Shown here: positions 3,190-30,170 of the stretch, one piece after another | Layout of the letters: each line of letters starts with the position of its first letter | Position numbering within the stretch: position 1 is the first letter of the stretch | Source of the DNA: Octopus bimaculoides | Taxonomy: Eukaryota | Direction of reading: 5' to 3' | NCBI RefSeq assembly: GCF_001194135.2 | Contig: NC_068988.1 | Location: 84,320,481-84,357,328 of the forward strand | DNA length: 36,848 nucleotides | Translations under genes and position numbers: made by a program | Notes under the pieces: model-generated | Seen by the model: only the letters and a program-made list of their open reading frames with translations | Database searches by the model: none | What the model was told of the DNA's origin: nothing

Positions 3190-3460
3190 GCTAGTATTGT
3201 TGATGTTGGTGATGGCACTAGTGGTTCATGATGGTAGTGCTTGTATTGTTGGGTGATGGTGCTGTTAGTGGTAATACAGTTGTTATGAGCATGCTGATGA
3301 TTGAGTTCATAATGTAGGTGGATGAGTAATATTGACAAATAGATGGTGACTGAATGAGTGGTAGTGATGATGATTATGTTGATCATAATGAGGAGTTGAG
3401 GGTGGCACTGGGCAGGTATGTTATTAACAAACTTCATAATTTCATTATGTTTACTTTCAG

Positions 3461-3517
3461 GTTTGTCAGATTATGCTGAAATTGTAGAAGAGGAAGGTGA
3501 CTACAGTATCCCAGATG
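3461..3517 (+). CDS. PTK2: FAK autophosphorylation-site exon (R)LSDYAEIVEEEGDYSIPD
   Basis: tttcag acceptor and gtgagt donor; 57 nt, phase 1-1. DYAEI matches the FAK Tyr397 Src-SH2 docking motif, and the later DY matches the Tyr407 region of human DDYAEIIDEEDTYTMP. Confidence 0.95.
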
Positions 3518-3845
3518 GTGAGTTCAGCTGTTAATTTTAGATGAAACTTCATCCTACACACACATACACACATATTTGCATACAGACACAACTTTTGCCC
3601 ACACATACATAAGTAATAATTGTCTCTGCCTGTATCCTGGCCACATGTTACATAATTCAGTGTGTCAATATAATATTCTCTAAATTGTGACAGCATGTAT
3701 GCATAACGTTATCTAATTTTTCTGAAGCATCCTACTATATGTATGTATGTCCTAAATATGGAATTGGTCTATTATGTATATATGGAAATTATATCTCTAT
3801 GGCTGTTGTTCATTTAACACATTTAATATTTTCAATAATTAATTT

Positions 3846-4015
3846 AGGAGGCGAGCTTGTAGAAGTGTTAGCATACCAGACAGAATGCTTAACAGCATTT
3901 CGTCCGTCTTAGCATTCTTAGTTCAAATTCTGCTGAAGTTGACTTTGCCCTTTATTCTTTCAGGGTCAATAAAATAAGTACCAGTTGATTAGTGGGGTTG
4001 AGTGGATTAGTGGGT
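3846..4015 (+). mobile_element. tRNA-derived SINE, family A (core gtcgactttgcctttcatcctttcggggtcgataaa..aagtaccag), decayed
   Basis: Similar by eye to the 14062-14273 copy. Further copies at about 13335-13545, 14715-14935, 26960-27115 and 28990-29190. Confidence 0.7.
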
Positions 4016-4436
4016 TGAGGGCAGTGAGATTGACATAGTCAGTGTTCAGCTTGAACAGCTGTAATTCAATATCTGCAGAAAAAAATATGTACAGAGACAG
4101 GATTCTCGTGGTTACTGCAGGACTTGCAAGACAAAGTTGATCTGTTGCAAATAGGAATGACAGTTTAGCAGGTGGGCTTCAGTGAAGATGATATGTAGTT
4201 AATGGAACAAAGGTTGGAATAGTAGCAATAGACTTGGTTGGAAGAAAATATAGTGCATCTTATCTGTAGATCAGAGGATGTAGTGTGTTGGTTCTGAGTA
4301 TAATACTAAATTTTCATTGTCTCAGTTCACCCAGTTGTGTGAAAAATGTGTCAGGTATTTTTGGTTGAAAGTACCCTAGAATGGGGATATATATCTCGCC
4401 TTGTCCTTAAGGATCCTTAAGCTTAATAAAAAGGGT

Positions 4437-4569
4437 TTAACTCTAAATACCAACCTGCCTGAGACTGTCCCTGGTTCATGATACACACATCCTGTTTTTA
4501 AAGTGTTCTAAATTAAAAACGTCCAATAAAATTTCATGTTAATCAGAAATATGATAACAAGAGGGTTAA
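4437..4569. mobile_element. piggyBac-like MITE flanked by TTAA; related inverted copy at about 30384-30515
   Basis: TTAA at 4437-4440 and 4566-4569 with an ...agaggg/ttaa terminus. The internal sequence matches the reverse complement of 30384-30515. Confidence 0.55.
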
Positions 4570-4689
4570 ATAATCCATGCAACTTGCAGTCATAAAATTA
4601 TTTCATCACCAACAAAATATTAGATAATTTACTTACTGATTGCTACTGTATTAATGTAACTTAATGATATTTTTATGTGTTTGTGTGCT

Positions 4690-4737
<48 letters not shown>

Positions 4738-5311
4738 AAAATATGCTGTTCCATGATTTGTCATGCAAATGAATAAAATCCAAAATGTTAAAATTCTTTA
4801 TNNNNNNNNNNNNNNNNNNNNNNNNNNNNNNNNNNNNNNNNNNNNNNNNNNNNNNNNNNNNNNNNNNNNNNNNNNNNNNNNNNNNNNNNNNNNNNNNNNN
4901 NNNNNNNNNNNNNNNNNNNNNNNNNNNNNNNNNNNNNNNNNNNNNNNNNNNNNNNNNNNNNNNNNNNNNNNNNNNNNNNNNNNNNNNNNNNNNNNNNNNN
5001 NNNNNNNNNNNNNNNNNNNNNNNNNNNNNNNNNNNNNNNNNNNNNNNNNNNNNNNNNNNNNNNNNNNNNNNNNNNNNNNNNNNNNNNNNNNNNNNNNNNN
5101 NNNNNNNNNNNNNNNNNNNNNNNNNNNNNNNNNNNNNNNNNNNNNNNNNNNNNNNNNNNNNNNNNNNNNNNNNNNNNNNNNNNNNNNNNNNNNNNNNNNN
5201 NNNNNNNNNNNNNNNNNNNNNNNNNNNNNNNNNNNNNNNNNNNNNNNNNNNNNNNNNNNNNNNNNNNNNNNNNNNNNNNNNNNNNNNNNNNNNNNNNNNN
5301 NNNNNNNNNNN

Positions 5312-5375
<64 letters not shown>

Positions 5376-5449
5376 AGAAACAAGAGAATAAGTACTCATA
5401 ACATGAACTAGAGTATATATGTGTTTGAATGTACACGTGACATATTGAG

Positions 5450-5586
5450 ATTTGTGAGGAAGGGCATCCATCCATAAAAACCATGCCAAAACAGACAGCC
5501 TGGTGCAGTTCTTTGGCTTGCCAGCTCCTGTCAAATCACCCAACCCATGCTAGCATAGAAGATAGATGTTAAATGATGATGATGGA
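5450..5586 (+). mobile_element. RTE LINE/SINE 3' tail fragment ending in (GAT)n
   Basis: aggaagggcatcca...ccaacccatgctagcat...gttaaatgatgatgat matches the tail at 34690-34832. Minus-strand tails also occur at about 6193-6410, 23937-24045, 25936-26125, 29552-29685, 29925-30160 and 34838-34945. Confidence 0.8.
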
Positions 5587-7132
5587 TAAAATCATCCTCC
5601 ACAAATTGTGGATTCTGTAAGTTGCAATGCAGGGTTATCCATCTGAGAGGACAATAATTCTGAATAAGAACTGATGCAAGGTGTAGTGGGACTTAAAGTC
5701 CTCTGTGTTTGCGATAACATTTTTCAGGCCTGTAGCATGATGAAATACACCCAGTTCATATTTTGGGCAGGTTGTTGCTGTGTGCAAGATAACCCAGACT
5801 GTGACAACTTGTTCAGACCATATCAGCATAGAAAATGGACAGATGATGATGGTGTGTCTCTTTGTGTTTGTCCCTCACCACTGCTTAACCGATGTTGATT
5901 TGTTTCCCTTCCCATAACTTAGTGGTTGATTTGGTCAACTAAGACCCTTCAGGGTTGTCTCAAGGTGGCCATAGTCCACTCACTGAAATGAGTTAGATAA
6001 AAAAATTATATATGTATTTGTATTTGCAAACCAGAGGACAAAGTACCCCGTACCAAAGTAAAGTATAACTATTGTGGTCCTCAGATGATTTTCTGTATTC
6101 CAACTTCAATGATTCTTTATTCTTCACATAACTTACATTATATATGTTCATGTGTGTGTGTATGTATATATAAGCCTATAACACACACACTACATCATCA
6201 TCATCATTGTTTTATTTCCGCTTTCCTTACAGTTAAGGGTTGGGTGGATCAGCAAAGTGCATGTCAGTTCTTATCCAGTTACCACTCAACTAGATGGAGC
6301 CAAAGAACCATATCTTGCTTGTGTTTCCTTTTTGGCGTGGTTTCTAAAGCTGGATGCCCTTCCTAAGACCAATCACTTTACAGAATGTAGTGGGTACATT
6401 TTTTCAAGGCACCAACTCTAGAGAGGTTGTCATGTCCTCAGTAAGACTAAAGGCTTCTTCTTAATGTCATAATTTACTGAGTAAGCTGGGCACATTTTTT
6501 CATGGCACCAGCATGAGAGTGGTTACTATGTCCTCAACAAGAATAAAGGCTCCTCTCACCTCCATGTCTCTGTTCACTCCCAAACGGCTTTACTGTGTAT
6601 CCTGAGTGCATTTATAGTGACACCAACACTAGTGGAATTGTCTTCTATCCTTTAAAACTAGAGAGTCCCCATCAGTGTGTTTGTTTTGTTCTCTCAAGGC
6701 TCCCTTTGTAACTGAGGAGCAGAACACGAGAACAACAATAATAAAAGAACAAGGAGGGGCAGGAAAGAGGAGCAAGAGTGTGATGGTAGAAACAGAATGA
6801 TAGTGATAAGAAGGTAGTAAAGGGGCTGAGAGAGTGAAGGATAATAAAAGTAGAGGATAAATGGTAACAGTGAATGATAGATGTTGATACCAGATAGCCT
6901 GGTAGGGTGCCAGGGAATATAGGGAAGATTGATAGTATGTGGAGTGCATGCAAATCTGATGTGATACTCCTTATACACAAAAACACTCACACATATATAC
7001 ACACACCAATGTGTAGTAAATATTTTGTTTACCTATGAAGTAAAATTCCTGAGCTTTACCATTGCCATGTCTTTGTGTTCAACCAAACTCTGTCTATTCT
7101 GTCTTCAACTGGATTCCTACTTGATATCTCAG

Positions 7133-7174
7133 GTGAAAATCTATGCGTTTCTCGCCGGAAGAAAGATACTAAGC
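7133..7174 (+). CDS. PTK2: Candidate alternative cassette exon of FAK, 42 nt, (G)ENLCVSRRKKDTK(P)
   Basis: Acceptor ...cctacttgatatctcag and strong donor gtgagt at 7175. Length is a multiple of 3, phase 1-1 as the flanking exons require, and there is no stop in that frame. No transcript evidence available. Confidence 0.6.
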
Positions 7175-7191
7175 GTGAGTTAATCGACTAA

Positions 7192-7729
7192 GCATGGTTT
7201 TCGTGCTTTTGTTCTTCAAGAATTTGGAGCTCTTTAAGCACTCACCGAAATTGGAATTTTACATTTGCCACACACTATTAGTATTGAATCTAGCATGTTC
7301 CATTTTGTTAGCATTTCCTGTTAAAGAAAGAATTAATAATAATAATAAATGATTAAAGTTACTAATCTAGTCACAAACCTACCTTTTGAGGCTTACAATC
7401 AGGTATATGCAAAAAAGAATAAAGAAAACAATGCATGGTATTGGAATTGTTATTTGAAACTAAATGTATAAGAAAAATGGAAAAAAAAAATCTGGTAAAT
7501 TCTTGATGCTGTAATTAAACTGCCATGTTATGAGAATGTAAGAAAAAGCATGTTTGATTTGAAACACATCTTACTAATATTAACTGCACACAATATACCT
7601 GCACATTGTGAAAATTAATATAAAATTGCTATTTGATGATAGTTAAGCATTAAGCAGACTATAGTTTGAGTTTAAACTGTGTGTATCTGAGTGTGTGTGA
7701 ATTTTTGTGTGTGTGTGTGTATATGCATG
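7192..7729 (+). promoter_or_regulatory. Cluster of RBFOX-type (T)GCATG motifs, plus two QKI-type ACTAAT motifs, downstream of the candidate cassette exon
   Basis: GCATG at 7192, 7293 and 7548; TGCATG at 7432 and 7724; ACTAAT at 7361 and 7573. Function is inferred. Confidence 0.45.
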
Positions 7730-9125
7730 CACCTGCGTGCATAAGCCTTGCATTACAGCTGATAATGAAATTAATATGCTTCCTGGTTTTGAAAATATGA
7801 CATAGCTACAGCACGTTATGAATCTTGGTAGTCCTTAAGTTTTTGATGCCAAGGCTAACCCTTGGGCAGCAAGCTAATTAATACATCTGGAGGATTAAGA
7901 GGAAAATGTTTCCCCATCAAATTTTATGACGCTTTTTAACAAGCACAATTTTTTTTAAAATTCATTCGACAGCCTAGAAAGAAATGTATATGTATCTCAT
8001 CTACAAGCAAGTTTGTGTTTCAGTAAGTGATAATAGGAGGACAGGGGAAAAGAGCAAATTTCACTCATCAAATGTAAGCAGTTTGATTTTATGTTGAAAA
8101 GAATTTTATAATTGTTTAGGTGTACTAGTTACCTACTTCTAAATTTTCTGTGAAAGACTAAACATCTACCTCGAAATCATTTTGATGTGTAACATAGCTT
8201 ACTGGACATGTTTAGGTTTTGTTTCAAAAACCTTGGTACTACCAATTGTAATTAATAAGGAATATATGGTACTCAGATGTCTTTGATATTTGTATTTCTT
8301 ATTGAAGTTTTTTTTTTTTTCTTTTTAACTGTTTCACATCCATTTTTCCATGTTACCATTGATAGGGTGGATTTTTTTCTTTTTTGTTTGCACAGCTTTT
8401 TTTTTCCATTGCAGCTGAGTGTTTTTCCCCAACCCCTTATAATGGACCATTCAAATATCAAGTAGTAGTGAAACTTGTTTGAGTTTGGTAAATTAGGCAA
8501 TCTGAGTCAAGCCTGTATTTTTAGTTAGCATTCTAATGTTCCTTGCATTAGGTATGTAGGCAGTATTGTTTTTCATGCAAATGGCATCTCTGAATTATTG
8601 TATTTCTAAATGGGTTTTTTTTTCATCCTACAACTAGCCTTTTACATTTGTGTAGTGTAGTGATTCTTTCATCACTAATTCACCAAATAGTGGGAACTTT
8701 GTTTTCCTGGTGAAGTCAGAATAATACTGAAATATGTACAGAGTTGTCAACCATACATCTCCGAAAATTTATAAAATGGAAATGATATTCTTCATTGATG
8801 AGTGTTTTTTTTTTCTCATCACATTTATTTCTAGCATTTTTAATAATATATTTAATGCATTAAACTTGAATTTACTGGTCAGAGTAATGCCCCAGAGACA
8901 CAACATAATGGATGTAGCTGCAATTTGAACTTATGGTCTTGAGGCTAGCAATCCAGCTCCTTTCACCTTCCATTCAGTGTTATATTGAATGCCATATTAG
9001 CTTTTGACTTCTTCAAAATAAGTAATCTAGGGGAATCAGTGTTAGCATATTTTGTACATGGAATCTTAGAAAATTAACTATACATAAATAGATTGTGAGA
9101 CACACTGATGCATTAGATAAATAGA

Positions 9126-9178
9126 TGGAGGGACTATAGATATAAGGATTAGACTGGAGGGACTATAGATATAAGGAT
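9126..9178. repeat. Short tandem duplication, period 29
   Basis: tggagggactatagatataaggat at 9126-9149 and 9155-9178. Confidence 0.9.
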
Positions 9179-9422
9179 AAGTTAGTGTTAACATTTAATT
9201 TGAAAATCGTTAAAAACCTAACTAGAAATAAATATGCAATGAAGGAAAAAACCATGAGTTAATGGCTAATATCTTCAATTTTTCCATAGGTATGGGGGAA
9301 GAAAGGTAACATTTCTTAACATGTTTGTCTTATTCTTATATTGTCAATGTAAGCATATCCTTCTCTCACAAAATCTGATTAAATAAAACAAGGTTACAAT
9401 TGGTATGTAAAAATGTGGGTGG

Positions 9423-10790
9423 TCGTCATCATCATCATCATCGTTTAAGATCCACTTTCCATGCTGTCATGGGTTGGATGGTTTGACTAAGGACTGAAAG
9501 CCAGGAGGCTGAACCAGGCTCCAATCTGTTCTGGCAAGGTTTCTACAGCTAGATGCCATTCTTAACGCCAACCACTCCAAGAGTGTGGTAGGTGCTTTTT
9601 ACATGTCACACTGACGCAGGAGCCAGTCAGGTGACACTGGCATTGACCACGCTTGAATGGTGCTTTTACATGCCACCAGTACTGGCATTGGCCACGCTTG
9701 AATGGTGCTTTTTACGTGCCAGCCTGGTGGCACTGGCATCGGCCACGATGATTTCACTTGACTCAACAGGTCTTCTCAAGCGCAGCATAACACCCAACGA
9801 TTGAAGGGTACTTTTAAACGGGTTGGTTATGCGACACTTGCATCAGCCACAGCTATAATCTCACTTGGCTTGCTGAGTCTTCTCAAGCACAGCATTTCGG
9901 TTGCTTGTCATTGCCTCCGTGAGGCCCAACATTCAAAGGTCGTGCTTCACCACCTCATCCCAGGTCTTCCTGGGTCTACCTCTTCAACAGGTTCCTTCCA
10001 CTGTTAGGGTGTGACACTTCTTCACACAGCTGTCCTCATTCATACACAACACATGACCATACCAGCACAGTCATCTCTGTTGCACACCACATCTGATGCT
10101 TCTTATGTCCAACTTTTCTCTCAGGGTGCTTCAGTGTATACACACTGGCATTACACATCCAGTGGAGCATACTAGCTTAATTTCTTTCAAGCCTGTGCAT
10201 GTCCTCAGCAGTCACAGCCCATGTTTCACTGCCGTGTAGCATGGCATATTTGCAAACATGCATCATACAGTTTACTTTTCACTCTGAGCGATAGGCCCTT
10301 TGTCGCCAGCAGAGGAAGGAACTCTCTGAACTTTTCTCAGGCTATTCCTTTAGCAGCTACGCTCTCGGAGCATCCACCCGTGCTACTGACTTGGTCACCT
10401 AGGTAACAGAAGCTATCAACTACTTCGTTTTTTGTCTTCTGGCATGTGATGGAATGTTTTCTGTATGTCTTTGGTATTTATTGTTGCCCCTCTGCATCTG
10501 CCACACACAAAAACTATCTTCCCGGTTAACCCTCCTTTGATATTGCTCCACCTTTTATGTGTCCATAGCTTACACCGGGTACATCTTAAGGAGTTTCTAC
10601 CTGAAGGGACTAGTGATTGTAGCAATCATGTTGGCCTTAGATACTGTCTGTTTTAGCACCATTACCTATTCTTTAAGTGCTTTTAGTAGGGTTCACTCTG
10701 TTGCAAGCCTTCAGACAAGCCCTCCAGCTCCACTTCAGTTTTCTTGTAGATGTTCAAACTGGACACCACCCCTCTCTTTCTTGCCAGTCT
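9423..10790 (-). mobile_element. 5'-truncated RTE-type LINE (late RT, PHD-like finger, 3' UTR, (GAT)n tail)
   Basis: Reverse complement of the 33300-34830 region. Minus-strand translation gives RNSLRCTRCKLWTHKRWSNIKGGLTGKIVFVCGRC and SFCYLGDQVS. The tail (CAT)n is at 9426-9440. The 5' boundary is uncertain. Confidence 0.9.
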
Positions 10791-11269
10791 GAGAGTGTGG
10801 CCTACAAAGGTCATGGACACTACTCTTCATCCTTTTACTATTTTATAGACAAGAAGAAAGGATTATAATGAGGATGGTGGTGATGGTTGTGGATGTTTGC
10901 ATTATGTTTCTTGAGTAAGACTCATAATACTTTGTTATAGTCTAGATATCTGACAGGTTCCACTCCTGAATCATACTTGAGTTATTAACAATTGAAAGAG
11001 GTAGACATATGTCTTACGCATGAAAAACATGACTACAGCAACAATGAAGTCAACAAAGCTGTGTTGTTCAAATCATTCTTGCACAGAAAAATTGGATGTA
11101 AAACTACTGTAGGAAAGAAAGATCTAGAATAATGTATAATAAGAGCAGGACAAAACTAAAGAAAAGAGGAGGTGGGGTGAACATGGTGGTGGCAGATTTG
11201 TTTGGTTTCATTTCTGTGGAGTTTTTCTGCAGCAGACAATTGGATGTTGATATAGTTCATTGAAAACTG

Positions 11270-11318
<49 letters not shown>

Positions 11319-14061
11319 TCAACAGTTTTGTTTTTCAAAGACATTTTTTTCTCCCATTCTTCACATAAGTTTTAATCCAATTTTCTTGACTGCTTTANNN
11401 NNNNNNNCCCACCTTTTTTTCCCAGTCATTCACACACACTGTTTTTTTTTGGGGGGGGGGGTATATAGTAGATATTGTTACATTACACATAACTTGTTAT
11501 ATTTTGAATTATTCATATACAGATGCTATAGTTAATCAGGAGCACAAAAATGCTATACTTACCTCACGTTCTTAATATATTCCCCCTTTCATGCACATCA
11601 TACATAAACATAATATTCTTATTTCTCTCTTCACACCTTTCTCTCTCTAATACAGGCACACATATTCAAATATCATCATTCAGTCTCATTCTCTTCCTCT
11701 ATATCAGACAGCGCTGTTGTTTCCTAAAGCTTGTAACCCGGATGAGCCTCCATTCAAAAAGTCGATGTCTGCTACAAGCTCTCGCCATTTTCATTTCCAT
11801 CCCACTATCTACTCTTACCTACTCAATGTTCTTCCTGTTATTTACAGCGCCAGTTGGGGCTATACCAATTCATCTTGTCTAGGATTTTTTTTCTTTATAA
11901 ACGTGAAGATAAGAAATCACCTAGATCATTAGTACTGTCATTGACTAGAGATGCATGAAGCATTGTTCATTAAAACATAGGGATGTACAATTTAATTTAG
12001 CATGTTTGTATACACTCACTGCAGAAATTGTCTGAAGAGAAAAATTCTCCTTATAGACAACATATGTGACTATGTACTATTTGTGGCTTAAACATAAGAA
12101 CTGGATCTTATGAACAACAGATTTAGTATCTATAACTGATGAAGTACAAAGATGCAGAGATTTGTTCTCTACATTTGGATGATGTCATTAGTGGTAGATT
12201 TTCATACATACTGTCTTTAAGAATTTTTCTCCTGGGACAATTTCCACAGCAAAGGTCTTTCCAAGCCTTAAAGTACATGAACACATTAAATATAACTGTA
12301 CACACACACATATATCATTAATATTCAAGTTACATCTCTTTACATTATGAGTTCAAATCCCAACAAGGTCATTAAAATACCAGTGAAGTGCTGGAGTTGG
12401 TTAAATCAGTTGATTGATCCCTACCCTGTAGATCGCAGATAGATTAGCCGGTTTTTTTTTTGTAAGGATTTTTGAATTACACCATCTGTTAAAATATTAT
12501 TCATGAACCCTTGAAAAGTGTTTATAAAGGTTTCTAATCAAGTTAAAGGAGAGGGTGTGATGTAAAAATCATACCAATCACTACTAACACACTCACATCA
12601 ATAGTTTAATACTTAGTAGTGTTTAGATTAGATATAGATTATATGTTTTGATACTGATTGGTTGATTGATTATTAATTGCATGTTCAAAATTCAACTATT
12701 GCTGTCTTTTTATTTTATTTGATTATTTTATTAATAATAATTTACTTTATATGCAACATTGATGTTACAAAATTTATGCAAAATACAGCAAAAACAAAAT
12801 GTAATGTATTGAGGTGGTGAAGCTATATCAATTTTTGGTTGTAGGATGACTGTAAGGTTAAAACACTGGTGAACAGACCAGATGGTCAGTGGTTCAGATC
12901 CAACCACCGTTATTGTATTGTGTCTCTGAACAAAACAAAGCTCGTTTGAACCAATTTATTTGCAAAATTAATAAAAATACAAAAACAGACTCTACTCTTA
13001 TTTAACATTTGAGTAGTTGATGGTAGGATAGAACATCCATCTATAAATATAATGCCTTCAGCAAATAAACCATCCCAATCACCTCCTACTGCATGAATAA
13101 CAAGATGTTAAGCAGTACCAAAAACAATGCTATTTTATGGAGAATCTGGATTGTTAGAGCAGTAAGATACCTGGCAGCCAAGAGAAAGGACAAAAATTCA
13201 AATTCCTGACAATACGACATGTCCATGGTGAAAATACTTAAATGTCTCATCTCCCAGACTAGCTTGTTGTAAATATCCTGTCATCAGGGATAATGGTTTC
13301 TTTGAGTTGAATTGGTCGACATTATCATAAGTTTAAAAATTAATAGATAAATTTTAGTGCTGTTAAGACAAAATACCTTGCAGTATTTCTTCTGATTCAT
13401 TGCATTCTGGGTTCAGATTCCACCAAGGTTAACTTTGCCTTTCATCCTTTTGGGGTTGTTAAAATAAGTACCAGTTGAGCTCTGAGGTTGATGTAATGGA
13501 CTTAGCTCCTGCTCCCAAAGTTGTTGGCTTTGTGCCAAAATTTGAAATCATTATTATTACTATTTTATAGATCAAGTGTGTGTGATATAAAATAATAATA
13601 ATCTTGGTAATACATTATTGATAATAATAATAATTTATATCAGAAATGAGTGGTGGTCCTTGATTGTTGGGTGCCAAGTTCATATTCTGGTATATGTGTT
13701 GTTTCCATAAACTCTAGTTGTAAATAGGTGTCACAAAACAAACAACTTGATATCAGAAATATTAATTGCATAAAACTTACAAGTTGTTTGTTAACTTATT
13801 GTTGGGCCCAAATCCTGCTATGAGCAGTATAAGTTACAGAAGAATGGGGGCTCTATCAAGCTGACGTGATCATGCATGTAATAAGAGAGACAAATAGTTT
13901 GAAAATGTGGATTAGTGTGCCTGGCTGTTATGACCAAGAGTTCCATTCTTACTTCAGCCAGTGTGTACTGTTGTTTAGCTCTGGTTCAACCTTGTTTGAG
14001 CAAGTGTTCTAATCACAACCATTTCATCTCTTTTAAGACTGTGAAATTATATTATATATCT

Positions 14062-14273
14062 ATTTCGTTATTGCCCACAAGGGGCTAAACATAGAGGGAA
14101 CAAACAAGAACAGACGAACGGATTAAGTCGATTGCATCGACCCCAGTGCGTAACTGGTACTTAATTTATCGACCCCGAAAGGATGAAAGGCAAAGTCGAC
14201 CTCGGCGGAATTTGAACTCAGAACGTAACGGCAGACGAAATACCGCTAAGCATTTCGCCCGGCGTGCTAACGA
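14062..14273 (-). mobile_element. Young SINE copy, family A, with CpGs retained
   Basis: The minus strand reads gttagcacgccgggcgaaatgcttagcggtatttcg...gagttcaaattccgccgaggtcgactttgcctttcatcctttcggggtcgataaattaagtaccag, with a B-box-like gagttcaaatt. The core resembles MetaSINE-type central domains (unverified). Confidence 0.8.
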
Positions 14274-14984
14274 TCCTTGGCCTTACATAAACCAATAGAG
14301 TTCAGTTTAAGGAATATTGTGATGGTAGTTCTAGCAGGTCAAGTGACTGTGTTAGGTTCTTGTACTGGCTTTGTATGTGCTTATGGCAGCGGTATAATGT
14401 GATTATCTCATTTGAAACTAAGTTTCATGTTTCACTTTTTATTTTCATCATTTATTTATTTGTTATATTAGGATTTATTCCCTTCTCTCATTTAAAATGG
14501 TTTTTTGTTATTGATTCTTCTTTAAATTTTCCTTTGTTTAATGAAAACACAAGTGAAGTGATCTAACATTTTAATTTTTGGGTTAAATCTTAAATCTTAA
14601 AAAATTTTTTTTTTTCTCTATAAAACATGTGTTTAATACATTTTTTTTTTTCCATCATATGAATTTTCTTTGTTTTGTTTTTAATTGAAGAACATCCTTT
14701 TGTTAACTGCTTTAATATTAGTGTGAGTCCATGTGTGTGGGGAGATTAGCTGAATTAATATAATGTGAGACTAAATGCTTTCTAGCATTTCGTTTAAGCC
14801 TTTTGTATTCTGAGTTCAAATCCTGACAGCCAATTTCACTTTTCATTTTCCAGGGGTCAATGGAATAGGTGCCATTTAACAACAGGGTTGATTGCCATCA
14901 CCCACCAAATGTCAAACCTTATATCTCTGTTACAAATTAATAAATCTGTATGTACAGTTACACACACACGGATAGGTGCAAACA

Positions 14985-15310
14985 TGGGTGTGTGGGAAGA
15001 AGTTTACTTCCCAACAACATAGTTTTGCTTTCAGTCCCACTACATAATACCTTGGGCAAGTGTCTTCTACAACGCCAGGCTGACCAAAGCCTTTTGTGTG
15101 TCTATCTGTCTCTCCTTGTCTTGACATTATGTGTTAGTTGGAAATGATTTGTCAATGTCACATAATCAATGTCATTCATTTCCAATATTCTGAGAGAACA
15201 TGTCTAGCCATGGGGAAATATTACCTTACTTGAAAACAGGTGATGGTTGGCAACAGGACAGGCATCGTGCCATAGAAAATCTGCCTCAATAAACTATGTC
15301 CAATGCATGG
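14985..15310 (+). mobile_element. CORE-like SINE (family B head) joined to an RTE-type tail
   Basis: ttcagtcccac...accttgggcaagtgtcttcta...gaccaaagcctt matches the 36190-36468 family. It ends in aaaagtgggtgttaaaatgat. Confidence 0.65.
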
Positions 15311-15364
15311 AAAAGTGGGTGTTAAAATGATATATGTTTCATTTTTCCATACTTTTTTTTTTTG

Positions 15365-17150
15365 TTGAATGAGTCATTTTCAGCACATGATCATACATTT
15401 TTTTCCTATTGTCATTTCCTTCATAAGGTTTAACTTCCTGAAGTCAGCTTTCAACATATTTTTTTCCTGGTTTTCCTTTTCTGCAAACTCTTTCCACTTC
15501 GGTCACTTAGCTCTTTGCTACACAGCTGGCATTCTCATCATACGTCTGTACCAGTTCACTCTTCTCTTTTGTACACATCTGATTATTTACCCAATGCTTG
15601 CTTCATTTGCTTTTACCTTTTGCACTGTCTCTGCATTCAGTGTATAATTTTTGCCAACCATCAACATCACATTCAACACACAAATTCAACATCATATTCA
15701 ACACACAATCTGGCTCTTTGAACTTACGTTATTTGTAGAACTGCAGGTGCTAGCACAAATTTATGCAATCTGTACTTATAGTTTGTGTGTAAAATTTACA
15801 TCCATTGTCTAAATAAATGTACTGAACATCTTAATTAAATTATATTGAATACCATTTAATAATACAATATACGCACCAAATATAACAATTAAATAGCATA
15901 TAAATAAGCATGTAATCATCTCATTCTTACTCTAGTTGCTACACTTTCTGAACACCCTCCTCCACTGCTAATTAGGTCACCTAGGTAACAGAAGGTATCA
16001 ATTATTTCTGGAGCCATCTGTGCATTTGAAAGAAATTATCTAGTAGTGCTCTTAGTGCTAACTACTCTTGTGTATCTGCTAACTATGAAGTCTGTCTCTC
16101 TCAGACTGATGTAATCCCACAGCACCTCTTTTGTATTCATAAATTATATTGTCTGCTCCACATGGAACTCCAGCTTACTCTTTTTCTGTATATTAAACAT
16201 GGCCACATCCTAGATGGATGTAAAATCTTTCCTGCAAACTTTTCTCTTTGAAGATCTCTCCATTCTTAGCTTTCCTTCCATGTTTGAAATTTCTTCTAAT
16301 TCTTGGACAGATTCAGCTATTAGAAGTAGGCTTACAGAAGTTCTCACAGACAGCCAATCTTAAACTGTTGTTATACCATTAAGAATTATAACAAGCAATT
16401 GGTGGATGAGAATTAAACCCTGATAGACACTTTCTTAAACACTAACTTCTGCTCTGAATCTATTGCTAAGTCACACCTTCTCTGTACATATCTTGTACAG
16501 CTCTCATAAGTCATTTGTCTATACTTTGTTTTCTTAGTGACCACCTGACTTCAGAGTGTAGTACCTTGTTAAAAGCCTTCTCCAGGTCAGTGAGTACTAA
16601 GTATTGTGGCTTGTTCTTTTCTGAGAACTTCTTAAAGTTGTTTCACTTGGAAGAAGCTATCAATGGTACTTACCATAGAACAAACTCAAACAGCATCTCA
16701 GCCATACTAATTTTCTTAATGCGATTTGGTTTATCTGTTTGATGCCTCAGTAGTTGCTTCTTTCTTGAGCATCTCCTTTGCCCTTGTATCAGTCAATGAC
16801 ACTGCTGCTGTGACTGTCAAATAGATATATTTCCACTTCAAGTGCTATCTGATCAACCTCTCCCTCCTACATATTTCCTTCACTTTGTAACCTCTTATAA
16901 TTGCCTTCCTATGCTTCCTTCTCTTCTGAATCATTACATACACATTTCATCAATGTAATTCATAATGATACATTGCTTTGCAATCCAGAACACGTTATGC
17001 TTCTGACTCCCATACCACAAAAAATTCTCCTACTTGCCATTTACCTTTCCTGCTAAGTACATCAAGCTTCTCTTCTAGTGACTCGAAATTGTTTCTTGCT
17101 CCTCTCCTTTTTTATACTTTCATGTCTATCTTTTAGCTTTTCTGGTTCCA
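15365..17150 (-). mobile_element. Old, heavily decayed RTE-type LINE of a diverged subfamily
   Basis: Minus-strand fragments: EKNKPQYLVLTDLEKAFNKV (RT), LLIAESVQELEENFK, WPCLIYRK..QKRCCGI (finger remnant), DTFCYLGDLISSGGGCSE and IRCVQKRRVNWY...GKP. It has many stops and frameshifts. A separate RTE 3' ORF scrap lies at about 17165-17350. Confidence 0.75.
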
Positions 17151-18103
17151 TCAACTGTACCATATCATAACAATTCTTTCTGTGTTGGAGAGGATCCATC
17201 CAACCTATACAAGATTGTCACCTGTGTTCCTATGTCATCTCCTTTGTGAGGTTCATTATCTCAAGATCAGCTTTCACCGTTTGCTTCATTTCTCTCTACC
17301 CTATACATGCCGTCTATGTACAATGCTCATTTCTCATTACCTTATACCATCACAAACAATGACATGACTACACTTCAGAAGATAAATATGACTGTATTCT
17401 TTCTAGAAAAGGGTTTTTTTTTGTTGTTGTTTACACATTTTATTATAAGTTATTACAATGTAACCCATGAGTATGACCTGCTCAAGGAGAACATTGCCAT
17501 ACAGTAGTGACATGGCATGGTTCAAGAAGAGCCACAAAAGGATATGCCATGTCCTTTTGTGCTGCAGCTGGTGTGATTGATTGATTGATTGATGGTCAAA
17601 AGATGTACACAGCTGATATCACTTCTATTGTGTACTGTTCCAATAACATAAGCATTAGTGCTATTGATACAGCTGATATTACAAAATGACATAGCATGAT
17701 TGTGTGTGTATGTACAAATAAATATATATATGCAACAACATATATATAAACAAACTTATATTTTTTTTTTTAGAAGTGTCGAATGTGTATTGTATTATGC
17801 AGACAAGAAAGCAATATTTCAAGTGCAGTATTGCCATGAAAACAGCAGAAAAAGTGCAAGGTAGAAAAAGTTGTCAACGAACAGGGCTGTTTGTTGACAA
17901 CTTTATTCAATCTTGCAAGTGTAATAATACCCAAATTTTCTGCTGTTTTCTTGGCAATACTGTGTTCAAAATATTACTTTCTTGGCCATATATGTATACA
18001 CACACACAATAAAAATAACAGCACAGCTTTGTTTTGAATAAATGTGTATATTGAAATTATATATAATGTTTTATAAGCACATTTAGTTTCACTGTATAAA
18101 CCT

Positions 18104-18245
18104 GAGTGGCCTAGTGGTTAGGGTGTTGGGTTCATAATCATAAGGATGCAGATTTAGTTCCTGGGCCAGGTGATGTGTTGTTTCCTTGGGTAAGGCACTT
18201 CATTCCACATTGCTCCTGTCTCCTCGGTTGAAATAAGTACCAGCC
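18104..18245 (+). mobile_element. Decayed tRNA-derived SINE head with CORE-like segment
   Basis: A-box-like tggcctagtggtta, followed by ccttgggtaaggcactt resembling the CORE motif. Confidence 0.5.
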
Positions 18246-19391
18246 AAGAGGATGTCTATATATATACATGCAACTATATAGGCACCTAAACCAACTGGTG
18301 AAACCATAGTACACATTACCAAGTATTACTTACTGTGGGTGATAGCTATTGTTTGTAGTTTTACTGTGAAAATACCACCAGTGGATAAATCACAAGAGCA
18401 TTGGTAGCTAAGAGTAAAGAATTGGTGAATGTTTTGTTTTTTTCCAGACCTATCTATAGTTATAGTTTCACCAAGTAGCTGAACATACACTCATTAACTA
18501 TATTGTATATGATTTCCATATTCACATTTATTCATAACCACGTGCTGGTGTAAATGATATTGCACCAGTAATAGTTTGTTAATTACACCAGTTATGGTTT
18601 GCACTAGTAACGGTTCGTTAATGTTTTTCATAAAGAGACATAGTTTTTGTAACTGCAGCATTTGAGAAGTGAAGTAAGAGATGGCTGGGGAGCCTTGACA
18701 AAGGTGAATCATGTCTGCTGGTTCCTTACTCTCTCAACTGTCAAAGAACGTGGCTTATTTAGAGGATATAACTTTACTACAACACTTTTTTCTTTCCTAA
18801 AAAGAGAAGAAAAAAAACACTATCTTGTATACTTTAACATACAGGGACACACACACGTTAACTATATAAGAGAAGGAAGGTCCTCTTAATATATGAAGCA
18901 GATTTTTTTTCTGTTTATTCACAGGAAACTTTTGGTTTACTTTGTTGCTATTCTTTATCGTTTCATTTCTTACATTTTTAAAATATAGCAAAGATTATGG
19001 TGGCATTGAATCAGTCTGTAAAACCAGTGAGTTGGTAATGGCAGTCTGAGATATCATTTCATACATGATGTGAATTAACAGCTAAGGTTTAAACATATTT
19101 GTAAAAATTAATTTTTTTCACAAATGAAAAATAACCTCTCTAACAGAGGATCAACCATATATAGAGATTGAAACTGATATTACATTGAGTCTGCAGTTGT
19201 GACACTTTCTCATTCCTGTCGTTGGATTTGATGGTGTTTTTTTTTTAATTTTGTATTGTCAGTTTGAGCTTGAAAAAAGTATAATGTTTTGTGCAGGTGT
19301 GTTTGTAATTATTATATTTATTTCCCTTTTGCTATGTGTTTATATATGACTGTATACATGTATAATATTCTGTTTACTATTTAAATTACAG

Positions 19392-19489
19392 CCAAAAATT
19401 ATGAAATAGAACGAGAATCCATTCAGCTTGAAGAAATCTTAGGTGAGGGGCAGTTTGGTGATGTGTATCGGGGCTTATTCTATGATAAG
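19392..19489 (+). CDS. PTK2: FAK kinase exon, subdomain I: (A)KNYEIERESIQLEEILGEGQFGDVYRGLFYDK
   Basis: ttacag and gtgagt junctions; GEGQFG P-loop; 98 nt, phase 1-0. Confidence 0.97.
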
Positions 19490-21521: not shown

Positions 21522-21918
21522 GTGCCACCAGCACGAGGGCCAGTCAGGTGGTACTGGCAACGGCCACGCTCAAATGGTGTTTTTTACATGCCACCTGCAC
21601 AGGAGCCAGTCAGCGGCCCTAGCAACGATCACGCTTGGATGGTGCTCTTAATGTTCCACTATCATGGATGCCAGTCAGGCGGTGCTGTCATCAGCCACGT
21701 CAGTGAATTTGATTTCAATTTCACTTGCCTCAACAGGTCTTCGCAAGCAGCATTTAGTGTCCAATGAAAGAAAGGTACACATAAGTGGACTGGTTACACC
21801 ACTGGCATAAGCCACAGGTTATGGTCTCGCTTGGCTTGCTGAGTCTTCTCAAGCACAGCATATTTCCAAAGATCTCAGTCACTAGTCATTGCCTCGGTGA
21901 GGCCTAATGTTTGAAGGG
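21522..21918 (-). mobile_element. RTE 3' UTR fragment carrying the roughly 64-bp repeat units
   Basis: ctggcaacggccacgctc and ctagcaacgatcacgctt are reverse complements of the gagcgtg(a/g)tcgttgccag units at 34414-34624. Confidence 0.8.
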
Positions 21919-23047: not shown

Positions 23048-24269
23048 TAACTGGATTTCTTTCTCAAAATTTGGTAGTCTTGAAGCCTTTTTCAGTGATG
23101 TTAATAGCTCGATAGTTATTCATGTGAATATATCAACATATCTAACACAGTACTATGTAAGCTAAGGCAAGGTGCATCACTCTAACTGCAAGTACAGTGA
23201 ATGTTATAGTATTGAGATACAAACCTATTTGTAAAATATCCCCAATGTTTACTAACATATTCTGACATAGGTACATGGCCATACTTCAGTCATATGGCAC
23301 AGGTTCTCTGTACATTTTGTACAAGTGCCTTCTATCATAGAACTATGTCAATAAATACCTTGTGAATTGAATTTGATAGATGGGAACTCTGCAAAATATT
23401 GTCATCATTTTATGTCCACTTTCCATACTGGAATAGGTTAACACTTTCGTTACCAATTTTCTGCTGAGCTACACCATCTGTTTCAATTAATTTTGAAAAT
23501 AACAAAGAATTTAGTACAATAACATCACCTTTATTAAGCTTGTTTTTTGGAACATAAATTAATATGTAATTTTGATGGAAAGTTTTAATTTCGATCATAG
23601 TCAGATGCAGTTTTTGTCTCAGTCTGTCATTTCTTATTGCTCTCATTGACTGGTGCTTGTAGGTCTCACTTTGACTTGATTTCTGTAGGTGTATGTCCTT
23701 CCTGTCACCCATGGACAAGAAAGTTCGATAAGCCCTAGGTGACATGTATTTAAAGGGCTGTCACAGCCTTGCACTTTCACTGATCATTTGCTATCCACTC
23801 TACAGTGTATAGTGGTTCTATTTTTCATGGTACCAGCACTATGGAGGTTGTCAAAATCTCTGTGAAACAGGACTAAGGGGCTTCTCAACCTTACTTCATG
23901 TGCACTGGCTCACCAGTCGTTCTATAAGTATAATAATCATCATTATTTAATACCCGTTTTCAATGTTGGCTTAGATTGGACGGTTTGAGAGGATCTGACG
24001 AGTTGCAGGACTACGTCGAGATCCAGTGTCAGCCGCAGCCGACCCATGTGTGTTTATATAAATTTTTAAATACCGTCTTGCAATTATAAGTTGATGGGAA
24101 GTAACTCTCTTATGGTACGTAACTCGGGTGAATATTTAGCCATTAGGATTAATATAATTGACTGAGTGTTTCTACTTAGCTGCAGTTTAGTGATTGATTC
24201 TAGTAAAATAATACACACTTCACTGTATCTAAAATGTTAATTTTCTTACTGTTTTCGTGTATCTTTCAG

Positions 24270-29924: not shown

Positions 29925-30170
29925 ATCATCGTCTAAGGACCACTTTCCATACTGGCATGGGTTGGACGGTTTTACGTGGAGCTGGCTAGCAGGAACCTGT
30001 CCAGACTCCAACTGTCTTGTGACATGGTTTCTATGGCTGGATGCCCTTCCTAATGCCAACCACTTAACAATGAACTGGGTGCTTTTTACATGCCACCAGC
30101 ACAGGTGTGTGTACACAGCTCTGGCACAACCACTTTTTAAGTGGCGCTGGCACCTGAAAGGACAAGCTTG

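What the first reader, a model, noticed from the sequence alone, without database searches (positions are those of the whole stretch)
7133..7174. Hidden 42-nt cassette exon at the position of the vertebrate neuronal FAK box 7
Seen: within a 15.9-kb phase-1 intron there is one clean ctcag/42 nt/gtgagt unit. It is open in the required frame and would change YSIPD-A-KNYEI to YSIPD-GENLCVSRRKKDTKP-KNYEI. The unit and its donor flank keep six CpGs in about 75 nt, and about 2.4 kb around it shows no repeat I recognise, unlike the rest of the intron. Known: vertebrate brain FAK inserts the phase-1 box-7 exon (KSYGIDE) between the Tyr397 exon and the kinase start, and boxes 6/7 raise autophosphorylation. 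Inferred: this lineage may have an independently evolved or deeply diverged neural FAK isoform at the same junction, with an unrelated basic (RRKK) insert.
Basis: partly seen in the sequence, partly recalled or inferred. Interest (0 to 1): 0.85.

Follow-up and report, generated by a model that had tools for sequence, protein, structure and literature searches.

The report
Conserved basic mini-exon in molluscan FAK
A 42-base stretch hidden in a long intron of a mollusc's focal adhesion kinase gene is very probably a real optional exon, because snails and two other mollusc-like genomes carry a matching unit in the same intron, at the junction where vertebrate brains insert "box 7".

Summary
Window 7133-7174 is a 42-nt ctcag|…|gtgagt unit inside the 15,874-nt phase-1 intron between the Tyr397 (DYAEI) exon and the first kinase exon of a FAK orthologue. 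It is open in frame and reads G-ENLCVSRRKKDTK-P.

In this window alone the splice-site and reading-frame anatomy is no better than chance: 33% of intron shuffles give an equal or better unit.

Comparison with other genomes changes the verdict. The orthologous intron in three other taxa (the snail Candidula unifasciata and two unidentified mollusc-like contigs) each holds exactly one short in-frame AG…GT unit ending in the same basic motif:
- GKHKGCRVRRKS (Candidula)
- GKPIARGSKRKKS (L004)
- GRKRKSRKKKT (L001)

Between the window and Candidula, each of the four differing codons of the shared core changes at one base without changing the residue. Every unit has a GCATG (Rbfox-type) site 18-61 nt downstream. 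None of 76 control pseudoexons in 259 kb of control sequence has a basic run (Fisher p = 1e-4).

I conclude it is a genuine, conserved, frame-preserving cassette exon at the vertebrate box-7 junction, unrelated to box 7 in sequence.

Not shown: transcription, neural specificity and any effect on autophosphorylation. The exon is not confined to one lineage.

The parts
3461..3517 (+). Constitutive Tyr397 (DYAEI) exon of FAK, 57 nt. It enters and leaves in phase 1 and its donor is ATG|gtgagt.
   Evidence: The exon has the same 57-nt length and boundaries in L001, L002 and L004.
3518..19391 (+). Phase-1 intron of 15,874 nt, with N gaps at 4802-5311 and 11398-11407. It is orthologous to the vertebrate intron that holds exon 16 (box 7).
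   Evidence: Phase-1 introns at the same codon are seen in molluscs and arthropod-like loci and are inferred for vertebrates.
7093..7132 (+). 3' splice region: pyrimidine-rich tract (70% C+T over -40..-4) ending in tctcag.
   Evidence: The crude PWM ranks this acceptor 26 of 838 AG sites in the intron.
7133..7174 (+). Cassette mini-exon, 42 nt, reading G-ENLCVSRRKKDTK-P. It has a purine-rich GAAGAAAGA core and Arg codons CGC CGG.
   Evidence: Counterparts: L001rc 2411-2440 (GRKRKSRKKKT), L002 89849-89881 (GKHKGCRVRRKS), L004 8510-8545 (GKPIARGSKRKKS). Background test.
7175..7180 (+). 5' splice site gtgagt, the same hexamer as the two flanking constitutive donors.
   Evidence: Rank 36 of 954 GT sites.
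7192..7196 (+). GCATG, an Rbfox-type (U)GCAUG core, 18 nt into the downstream intron. Further copies start at 7293 and 7433.
   Evidence: only 1.3% of window positions have 2 or more GCATG in the next 125 nt. The other three taxa have GCATG at +20, +61 and +29.
19392..19489 (+). First kinase-domain exon (KNYEIERESIQLEEILGEGQFGDVYRGLFYDK).

Best explanation
Window 7133-7174 is a genuine, evolutionarily conserved, frame-preserving alternative cassette exon of a molluscan focal adhesion kinase gene. It lies in the ancient phase-1 intron between the autophosphorylation-site (Tyr397/DYAEI) exon and the first kinase exon.

When included, it replaces the junction Ala with Gly plus 13 residues plus Pro. 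This places a polybasic S-[KR]-[KR]-K-K segment in the acidic, flexible FERM-kinase linker, just before the kinase N-lobe.

Shown: the anatomy of the unit, its orthologous position, and its conservation in four taxa.

Inferred:
(1) Inclusion is regulated and enhanced by an Rbfox-type factor bound to the conserved downstream GCAUG. This would favour neurons and/or muscle.
(2) As with vertebrate box 7, lengthening the linker changes how Tyr397 is autophosphorylated. The basic run may also add an electrostatic function, such as binding acidic lipids, folding back on the acidic DYAEIVEEEGDY stretch, or acting as a basophilic-kinase or nuclear-import signal.

My probabilities: real spliced exon about 0.85; Rbfox-type tissue regulation about 0.5; raised autophosphorylation about 0.3.
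For: (1) Position and phase are identical to the vertebrate box-7 junction (PMC1570463).

(2) Each of three other orthologous introns has exactly one short in-frame, open AG…GT unit with a basic run.
- L001rc 2411-2440, 30 nt: donor ranks 1 of 107. Chance of an in-frame open unit with equal or better site scores is 6.7%; with a [KR]{4} run as well, 0.1%.
- Candidula L002 89849-89881, 33 nt: acceptor ranks 11 of 679, donor 15 of 724.
- L004 8510-8545, 36 nt: acceptor ranks 2 of 315, donor 5 of 641.

(3) In 258.6 kb of control intron and flank sequence from the same loci, both strands, there are 76 in-frame open pseudoexons of 60 nt or less and none has [KR]{3}. The target introns have 4 of 10, one per taxon. 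Fisher p = 9.9e-5.

(4) Coding-type divergence between the window and Candidula: TGC/TGC, GTT/GTC, CGC/CGT, CGG/AGG, AAG/AAA. The residues C, V, R, R, K are kept while single bases change. All four lengths (42, 30, 33, 36) are multiples of 3.

(5) GCATG lies 18, 20, 61 and 29 nt downstream in the four taxa. The product of the empirical probabilities is 4e-5. Binding of Rbfox downstream of an exon promotes inclusion (PMC10551640).

(6) CpG retention in a strongly CpG-depleted intron, including CGN Arg codons in all four taxa.

(7) Vertebrate boxes 6 and 7 at this linker raise Tyr397 autophosphorylation and allow it to occur within one molecule (PMC1570463).
Against: - No transcript evidence of any kind.
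- No database protein carries the insert. Every FAK protein seen across the junction lacks it, apart from vertebrate box-7 forms and genomic intron read-throughs; this includes the annotated Candidula protein P0152 and a metatranscriptome fragment P0270.
- Splice scores in the window itself are only in the top 3-4% of sites, and anatomy alone is matched in 33% of shuffles.
- The basic-run criterion was refined after seeing the data ([KR]{4}, then [KR]{3}).
- Two of the comparison taxa are unidentified contigs.
- There is no nucleotide conservation in the flanks beyond GCATG.
- Neural specificity and biochemical effect are inferred from a 5-nt motif and from vertebrate analogy.
Confidence: 0.8

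Rival explanations
1. Chance pseudoexon: an intronic AG…GT pair that happens to be in frame and open, and is never spliced into mRNA.
For: Shuffled introns give at least one equal-or-better in-frame open unit in 33% of trials. A second such unit exists at 18925-19026. No transcript or protein with the insert was found.
Against: It does not explain one matching basic in-frame unit in each of three other orthologous introns when none of 76 control pseudoexons has a basic run. It also does not explain the residue-preserving codon differences from Candidula, the GCATG within 61 nt downstream in all four taxa, or the CpG island.
Confidence: 0.08
2. Recursive splice site with an RS-exon. The AG|GT at 7132/7133 would serve stepwise removal of the long intron, and the 42 nt would normally be removed again through the regenerated 5' splice site.
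For: AG|GT is juxtaposed in the window, L001 and L004, with a downstream 5' splice site 30-42 nt away.
Against: Candidula has AG|GA, which cannot regenerate a 5' splice site. The regenerated sites are weak (ATG|GTGAAA scores 0.7, ATG|GTAGAA scores -1.4) compared with the unit's own donors (2.1 and 4.4). Recursive splicing puts no constraint on frame or encoded residues, yet both are conserved.
Confidence: 0.03
3. A CpG-rich fragment of a mobile element, or an unmethylated regulatory DNA element (intronic enhancer or promoter), that only looks like an exon.
For: Two of the other three CpG clusters in the window are repeat copies (14096-14280 and 34439-34690). No genome-wide repeat library could be consulted.
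Against: The region has no similarity to any other part of the window even at word size 7. It has no Rfam or tRNA match. The feature conserved across taxa is the reading frame, the splice boundaries and the basic peptide, not the DNA sequence. That pattern is the opposite of what a conserved DNA element or a young insertion would show.
Confidence: 0.04
4. A real conserved cassette exon whose inclusion is not neural, for example muscle-, gonad- or stage-specific or low-level everywhere, and whose role is unrelated to Tyr397 autophosphorylation, for example nuclear import through the RKRK/KRKK run.
For: Rbfox-type sites also drive muscle exons. Vertebrate exon 16 is also abundant in testis (PMC1570463). 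The SRRM4-type UGC motif next to the 3' splice site is absent (nearest TGC is at -70 in the window). The basic runs resemble classical nuclear localisation signals (general knowledge, not tested).
Against: Nothing here argues against it. It differs from the main explanation only in the inferred steps.
Confidence: 0.35

Closest known systems
Vertebrate FAK exon 16 ('box 7', KSYGIDE), the neuronal FAK+6,7 isoforms
   Same: It lies in the same gene, the same intron and the same phase-1 junction codon (T412 in vertebrates, Ala here), between the Tyr397 exon and the first kinase exon. Both are short frame-preserving cassettes inserted into the flexible FERM-kinase linker. (U)GCAUG motifs were reported around the vertebrate FAK alternative exons (PMC1570463), and a GCATG lies downstream here.
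   Different: There is no sequence similarity. Box 7 is 21 nt and acidic/aromatic (KSYGIDEA; fish KEYYGLDQA and KYYGLEEA). The molluscan exon is 30-42 nt and strongly basic. Corsi et al. found no such exon outside vertebrates. Tissue pattern and biochemical effect are known for box 7 and unknown here.
[quoted passage not shown]
   Same: [quoted passage not shown] That study's species set includes an octopus.
   Different: FAK/PTK2 is not mentioned in its main text and its supplements are not held. Neural specificity is not shown here.
Rbfox-enhanced cassette exons
   Same: A (U)GCAUG core lies in the proximal downstream intron, the position that promotes inclusion (PMC10551640).
   Different: Only the pentamer GCATG is conserved, and none of the four sites is the full TGCATG hexamer. 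No binding or dependence data exist.
SRRM4/eMIC-dependent neural microexons
   Same: Short, frame-preserving, in a signalling protein's disordered linker. The vertebrate Ptk2 microexons belong to this programme (PMC12868881).
   Different: The lengths of 30-42 nt exceed the usual limit of 27 nt. No UGC motif lies between the pyrimidine tract and the AG in any of the four taxa.

Membership tests
FAK/PTK2 orthologue (host gene) | DYAEI autophosphorylation motif followed by a FAK-type tyrosine kinase domain | tested here: met
   The spliced exons match chicken FAK 2J0J/2J0K at E = 1.5e-130, with PYK2 second. Nearest named proteins are Aplysia FAK1 (88% identity over 67% of the query) and Candidula (82%).
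Vertebrate FAK box 7 (exon 16) | Cassette located in the phase-1 intron between the Tyr397 exon and the first kinase exon | tested here: met
   The junction codon aligns with T412. P0073 and P0163 show MPS-KSYGIDEA-RDYEI against MPS-T-RDYEI.
Vertebrate FAK box 7 (exon 16) | Sequence homology to KSYGIDE and a 21-nt length | tested here: not met
   The alignment shows no shared residues. Lengths are 42, 30, 33 and 36 nt.
Vertebrate FAK box 7 (exon 16) | Neuron-enriched inclusion and increased, intramolecular Tyr397 autophosphorylation | not testable with these tools
Bona fide alternative cassette exon | Splice boundaries, frame preservation and encoded peptide conserved in orthologous introns of other species | tested here: met
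   Four taxa, with one basic in-frame unit each. Controls gave 0 of 76. Fisher p = 1e-4.
Bona fide alternative cassette exon | Spliced reads or cDNA that contain the exon | not testable with these tools
No inclusion-form protein appears in the databases.
Rbfox-regulated exon | (U)GCAUG in the proximal downstream intron, conserved across species | tested here: met
   GCATG at +18, +20, +61 and +29. Joint empirical probability is 4e-5.
Rbfox-regulated exon | Inclusion depends on Rbfox | not testable with these tools
   This needs a minigene or knock-down experiment.
SRRM4/eMIC neural microexon | Length of 27 nt or less, with a UGC motif just upstream of the 3' splice site | tested here: not met
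   The unit is 42 nt. The nearest TGC is at -70. None is present in the other three acceptor regions.
Recursive splice site / RS-exon | Conserved AG|GT that regenerates a functional 5' splice site | tested here: not met
   Candidula has AG|GA. The regenerated sites are weak.
Exonised transposable element | Similarity to a repeated element | tested here: inconclusive
   No copy exists within the window. No genome-wide library was available. Conservation across molluscs argues against a young insertion.

The most novel reading that the evidence does not exclude
Molluscs and vertebrates may each have placed a regulated mini-exon at the very same codon of the FAK linker, basic in one clade and acidic/aromatic in the other. 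They could have done so independently, or by descent from a bilaterian cassette that has since diverged beyond recognition. Either way this would point to a general, evolutionarily recurrent linker switch that sets how FAK autophosphorylates in neurons. The molluscan version would add a polybasic electrostatic element for membrane or self-interaction.
Probability: 0.3. Interest if true: 0.75.

Novelty: new variant of a known kind. Interest (0 to 1): 0.62.

Why it matters
FAK's neuronal splice isoforms were thought to be a vertebrate invention; Corsi 2006 found none outside vertebrates. A conserved molluscan cassette at the identical junction, with an unrelated peptide, would be a clean natural replicate.

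It would allow a direct test of whether linker length or linker charge controls cis-autophosphorylation of Tyr397. It would also add a concrete, biochemically tractable case to the emerging pattern of recurrent neural exons in the same genes across bilaterians.

It also flags an exon that at least one genome annotation (Candidula) has missed.

Tried and rejected
- A protein search with the inclusion peptide found only two unrelated skipped fragments.
- An exhaustive phmmer search with P0001 and two further homology searches gave many FAKs, but none carried the basic insert. Only vertebrate box 7 and intron read-throughs were seen.
- A metagenome scan for the degenerate candidate exon gave 0 hits.
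- Scans of genome contigs and viral contigs for the Tyr397-exon pattern gave 0 hits.
- Exact look-ups of three window ORFs near the exon found nothing on record.
- The Aplysia locus L003 is mostly masked and lacks the Tyr397 exon.
- L006 is too short. L007 and L008 do not reach the Tyr397 exon within 10 kb.
- The Rfam and tRNA scans found nothing above threshold; the only hit near the unit is a far-sub-threshold SCARNA7 match on the minus strand just upstream.
- Self-similarity at word size 7 found no repeat copy of the region.
- MAFFT nucleotide alignments of the flanks show no conservation beyond the exon and GCATG.
- A by-eye resemblance of the downstream flank to the SINE at 14096-14280 was not significant and was dropped.
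- The papers on Drosophila FAK isoforms and Toutant 2002 are not held.
- The splice-site scores use a crude PWM built from general consensus frequencies recalled from memory. It under-scores genuine acceptors in these AT-rich genomes, so I used it only for ranking.

Full report
**1. What is in the window**

The window carries part of a focal adhesion kinase gene on the + strand.
- 3454-3517
- 19392-19489
- about 20000
- 22685
- 24260
- 26380
- 28090
- 30810
- 36674

The spliced translation matches chicken FAK FERM-kinase structures 2J0J/2J0K at E = 1.5e-130, with PYK2 second.

The Tyr397 exon is 3461-3517, 57 nt, reading …LSDYAEIVEEEGDYSIPD followed by G|. It ends in phase 1 at ATG|gtgagt. The next exon starts at 19392 (ttacag|CCAAAAAT…). 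The intron is 15,874 nt and contains two assembly gaps.

The candidate is exactly as described: tctcag|GTGAAAATCTATGCGTTTCTCGCCGGAAGAAAGATACTAAGC|gtgagt at 7133-7174, 42 nt. It reads G-ENLCVSRRKKDTK-P in the required frame.

The source organism was not revealed by any tool. The nearest named proteins are gastropod FAKs: Aplysia at 88% identity over 67% of the query and Candidula at 82%. The window is therefore from a mollusc.

**2. Is it more than chance in this window alone?**

Not on anatomy. With a crude consensus PWM the acceptor ranks 26 of 838 and the donor 36 of 954 in the intron. Fifteen AG…GT pairs score at least as well. Two of them are in frame and open: the candidate and 18925-19026. 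Dinucleotide shuffles give 0.40 such units on average, and at least one in 33% of trials.

Two things are unusual.
- The CpG cluster: six CpGs in 57 nt, local observed/expected 1.9 against 0.24 for the intron. It is one of only four such clusters in the window, and two of the others are repeat copies.
- A local excess of GCATG downstream, at +18, +119 and +259. Only 1.3% of window positions have two within the next 125 nt.

The region resembles nothing else in the window and has no RNA-family match above threshold.

**3. The junction is the box-7 junction**

Vertebrate sequences retrieved here show MPS-T-RDYEI in the standard form and MPS-KSYGIDEA-RDYEI with box 7 (P0073, P0163). Fish have KEYYGLDQA and KYYGLEEA. 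The split codon T412 aligns with the window's split Ala codon.

Corsi et al. 2006 (PMC1570463) place exon 16 (box 7) between exon 15 (Tyr397) and exon 17. They report higher, intramolecular autophosphorylation with boxes 6 and 7, and they state that none of these exons could be found outside vertebrates.

**4. The decisive evidence: other genomes**

*L001.* A pattern scan for the Tyr397 exon in metagenome contigs returned one genomic contig, L001 (ENA OREC01031106). It has the same 57-nt exon and the same phase. At 353 nt downstream lies ttatttcctgtgatag|GTAGAAAACGAAAAAGCAGAAAAAAGAAAA|gtgagt. It is 30 nt, in frame, and reads G-RKRKSRKKK-T. Its donor is the best of 107 in the available intron. 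In shuffles an in-frame open unit with equal or better site scores arises in 6.7% of trials, and one that also has a [KR]{4} run in 0.1%.

*Candidula (L002).* A homology search with the spliced kinase region found the snail Candidula unifasciata (P0152), and its locus L002 was fetched. The Tyr397 exon is 85720-85776 (57 nt), the kinase-start exon begins at 95775, and the intron is 9,998 nt. Inside it lies ccctttctag|GAAAACACAAAGGTTGCAGAGTCCGTAGGAAAT|gtaagt at 89849-89881. It is 33 nt and reads G-KHKGCRVRRK-S. The annotated Candidula protein is the skipped form.

*L004.* A third locus, L004 (ENA ERZ25071447), has the 57-nt exon at 2890-2946, a 7,064-nt intron, and cccttag|GTAAACCAATTGCCAGAGGTAGCAAGCGAAAGAAAT|gtgagt at 8510-8545. 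It is 36 nt and reads G-KPIARGSKRKK-S. Its acceptor is the second best and its donor the fifth best in that intron.

*What the four units share.*
- An initial Gly codon (G|GT or G|GA).
- A length that is a multiple of 3.
- A terminal [SV]-[KR]-[KR]-K-K motif. In the three comparison taxa this motif runs up to the donor, with one further base. The window has three extra codons (GAT ACT AAG) between the motif and its donor.
- A strong GTRAGT donor.

Window and Candidula codons for C, V, R, R, K are TGC/TGC, GTT/GTC, CGC/CGT, CGG/AGG and AAG/AAA. Each of the four differing codons changes at one base and still encodes the same residue (protein alignment).

**5. Controls**

I applied the same loose thresholds to 258.6 kb of other intron and flank sequence from the same loci, on both strands. 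That gave 76 in-frame open pseudoexons of 60 nt or less, and none contains three consecutive K/R. The four target introns (34 kb) give 10 such units. Four contain three consecutive K/R, one per taxon. Fisher p = 9.9e-5.

In open 11-15-codon windows of real intron sequence, a [KR]{4} run occurs at 0.25-0.3% in the window and about 2% in L001.

GCATG first occurs 18, 20, 61 and 29 nt downstream of the four donors. The empirical per-intron probabilities of any GCATG within 61 nt are 0.087, 0.143, 0.068 and 0.048, with a product of 4e-5. L001 and Candidula even share GCATGTTGAT.

Caveats: the basic-run criterion was sharpened after seeing the data, and the 61-nt limit was set by the data.

**6. 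Distribution**

The phase-1 intron is ancient. It is present, but short and empty, in three loci: L005 (about 190 nt), arthropod-like L009 (about 165 nt) and L010 (51 nt). It is lost in several lophotrochozoan-like fragments where the two exons are fused (P0092, P0291, P0031).

The basic mini-exon is so far seen only where the intron is long and the flanking exons look molluscan (…PD-A-…GDVY[KR]G).

**7. Rivals**

*Chance pseudoexon.* It cannot explain sections 4 and 5.

*Recursive splicing.* It is excluded because Candidula starts AG|GA. In addition, the regenerated 5' sites score 0.7 and -1.4 against 2.1 and 4.4 for the units' own donors.

*Transposon fragment or DNA regulatory element.* This is disfavoured because what is conserved is frame, boundaries and peptide, not DNA.

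*SRRM4-type microexon.* This is not supported. No UGC lies near any of the four acceptors, and the lengths exceed 27 nt.

**8. Mechanism**

Shown: a conserved, frame-preserving unit with exon hallmarks, at the linker junction.

Inferred: a conserved downstream (U)GCAUG predicts Rbfox-type enhancement of inclusion (positional rule in PMC10551640), hence neuron and/or muscle bias. Inclusion lengthens the linker by 10-14 residues, next to the acidic DYAEIVEEEGDY segment. By analogy with box 7 this could permit cis-autophosphorylation. The polybasic Ser-containing run could in addition bind acidic lipids, fold back on the acidic segment, or act as a basophilic-kinase or nuclear-import signal. None of these steps is tested.

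**9. Novelty**

The literature searches found no description of a molluscan FAK splice variant. Corsi 2006 reported none outside vertebrates.

A 2026 preprint (10.64898/2026.09.05.749416) describes widespread recurrent evolution of different neural exons in the same coding region of orthologous genes, which it calls type I convergence. It includes an octopus but does not mention FAK in its text.

This case fits that known kind, with a different peptide chemistry and clade. Gene-model pipelines may already list such an isoform for some species. I could not check that.

**10. Verdict**

Its neural use (about 0.5) and effect on pTyr397 (about 0.3) remain to be shown.

Noticed in passing
window 14096-14280; copies at 13377-13504 (-) and 3884-3986 (-): A CpG-rich SINE-type repeat (up to 11 CpG per 75 nt) that looks tRNA-related by eye. 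It shows that CpG clusters in this CpG-poor gene are usually repeat copies.
   Followed up: partly
window 34439-34690; copies near 9426-9679 (-), 21522-21800 (-), 29925-30097 (-): A CpG-rich element with an internal tandem unit of about 64 nt, repeated in several introns of the gene.
   Followed up: partly
window 23966-24055: The third CpG cluster (6 CpG per 75 nt), about 200 nt upstream of the kinase exon near 24260. No intra-window copy was found and its nature is unexplained.
   Followed up: no
window 18925-19026 and 15195-15239: Two other in-frame, open AG…GT units in the same intron: 102 nt encoding a hydrophobic peptide, and 45 nt. Neither has a counterpart in the other taxa, so I take them as chance pseudoexons.
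   Followed up: yes
window 6973-7006 and 7678-7725: A (CA)n tract and a (TG)n tract, 76% complementary and 684 nt apart, bracket the mini-exon. In pre-mRNA they could pair and loop the exon out. They may equally be ordinary microsatellites.
   Followed up: no
window 6629-7002, minus strand: A purine-rich low-complexity stretch on the + strand leaves all three minus-strand frames open for about 100 codons. None of these ORFs is on record as a called gene.
   Followed up: partly
window 4802-5311 and 11398-11407: Assembly gaps (N runs) lie inside the intron, so further small exons there cannot be excluded.
   Followed up: no
L005 9792-10043; L009 7838-8066; L010 9912-10019; proteins P0092, P0291, P0031: The phase-1 intron after the Tyr397 exon is ancient. 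It is short and empty in arthropod-like loci and one other invertebrate locus (51 to about 190 nt). It is lost altogether in several lophotrochozoan-like fragments, where the two exons are fused.
   Followed up: yes
L002 (Candidula unifasciata, CAJHNH020008467.1) 89849-89881: The deposited Candidula FAK gene model (P0152) omits the 33-nt mini-exon, so that annotation appears to lack an isoform.
   Followed up: partly
L007 3783-7832: A full-length retrotransposon ORF (RT, RNase H and integrase domains) sits in a FAK intron of an unidentified mollusc-like genome.
   Followed up: no
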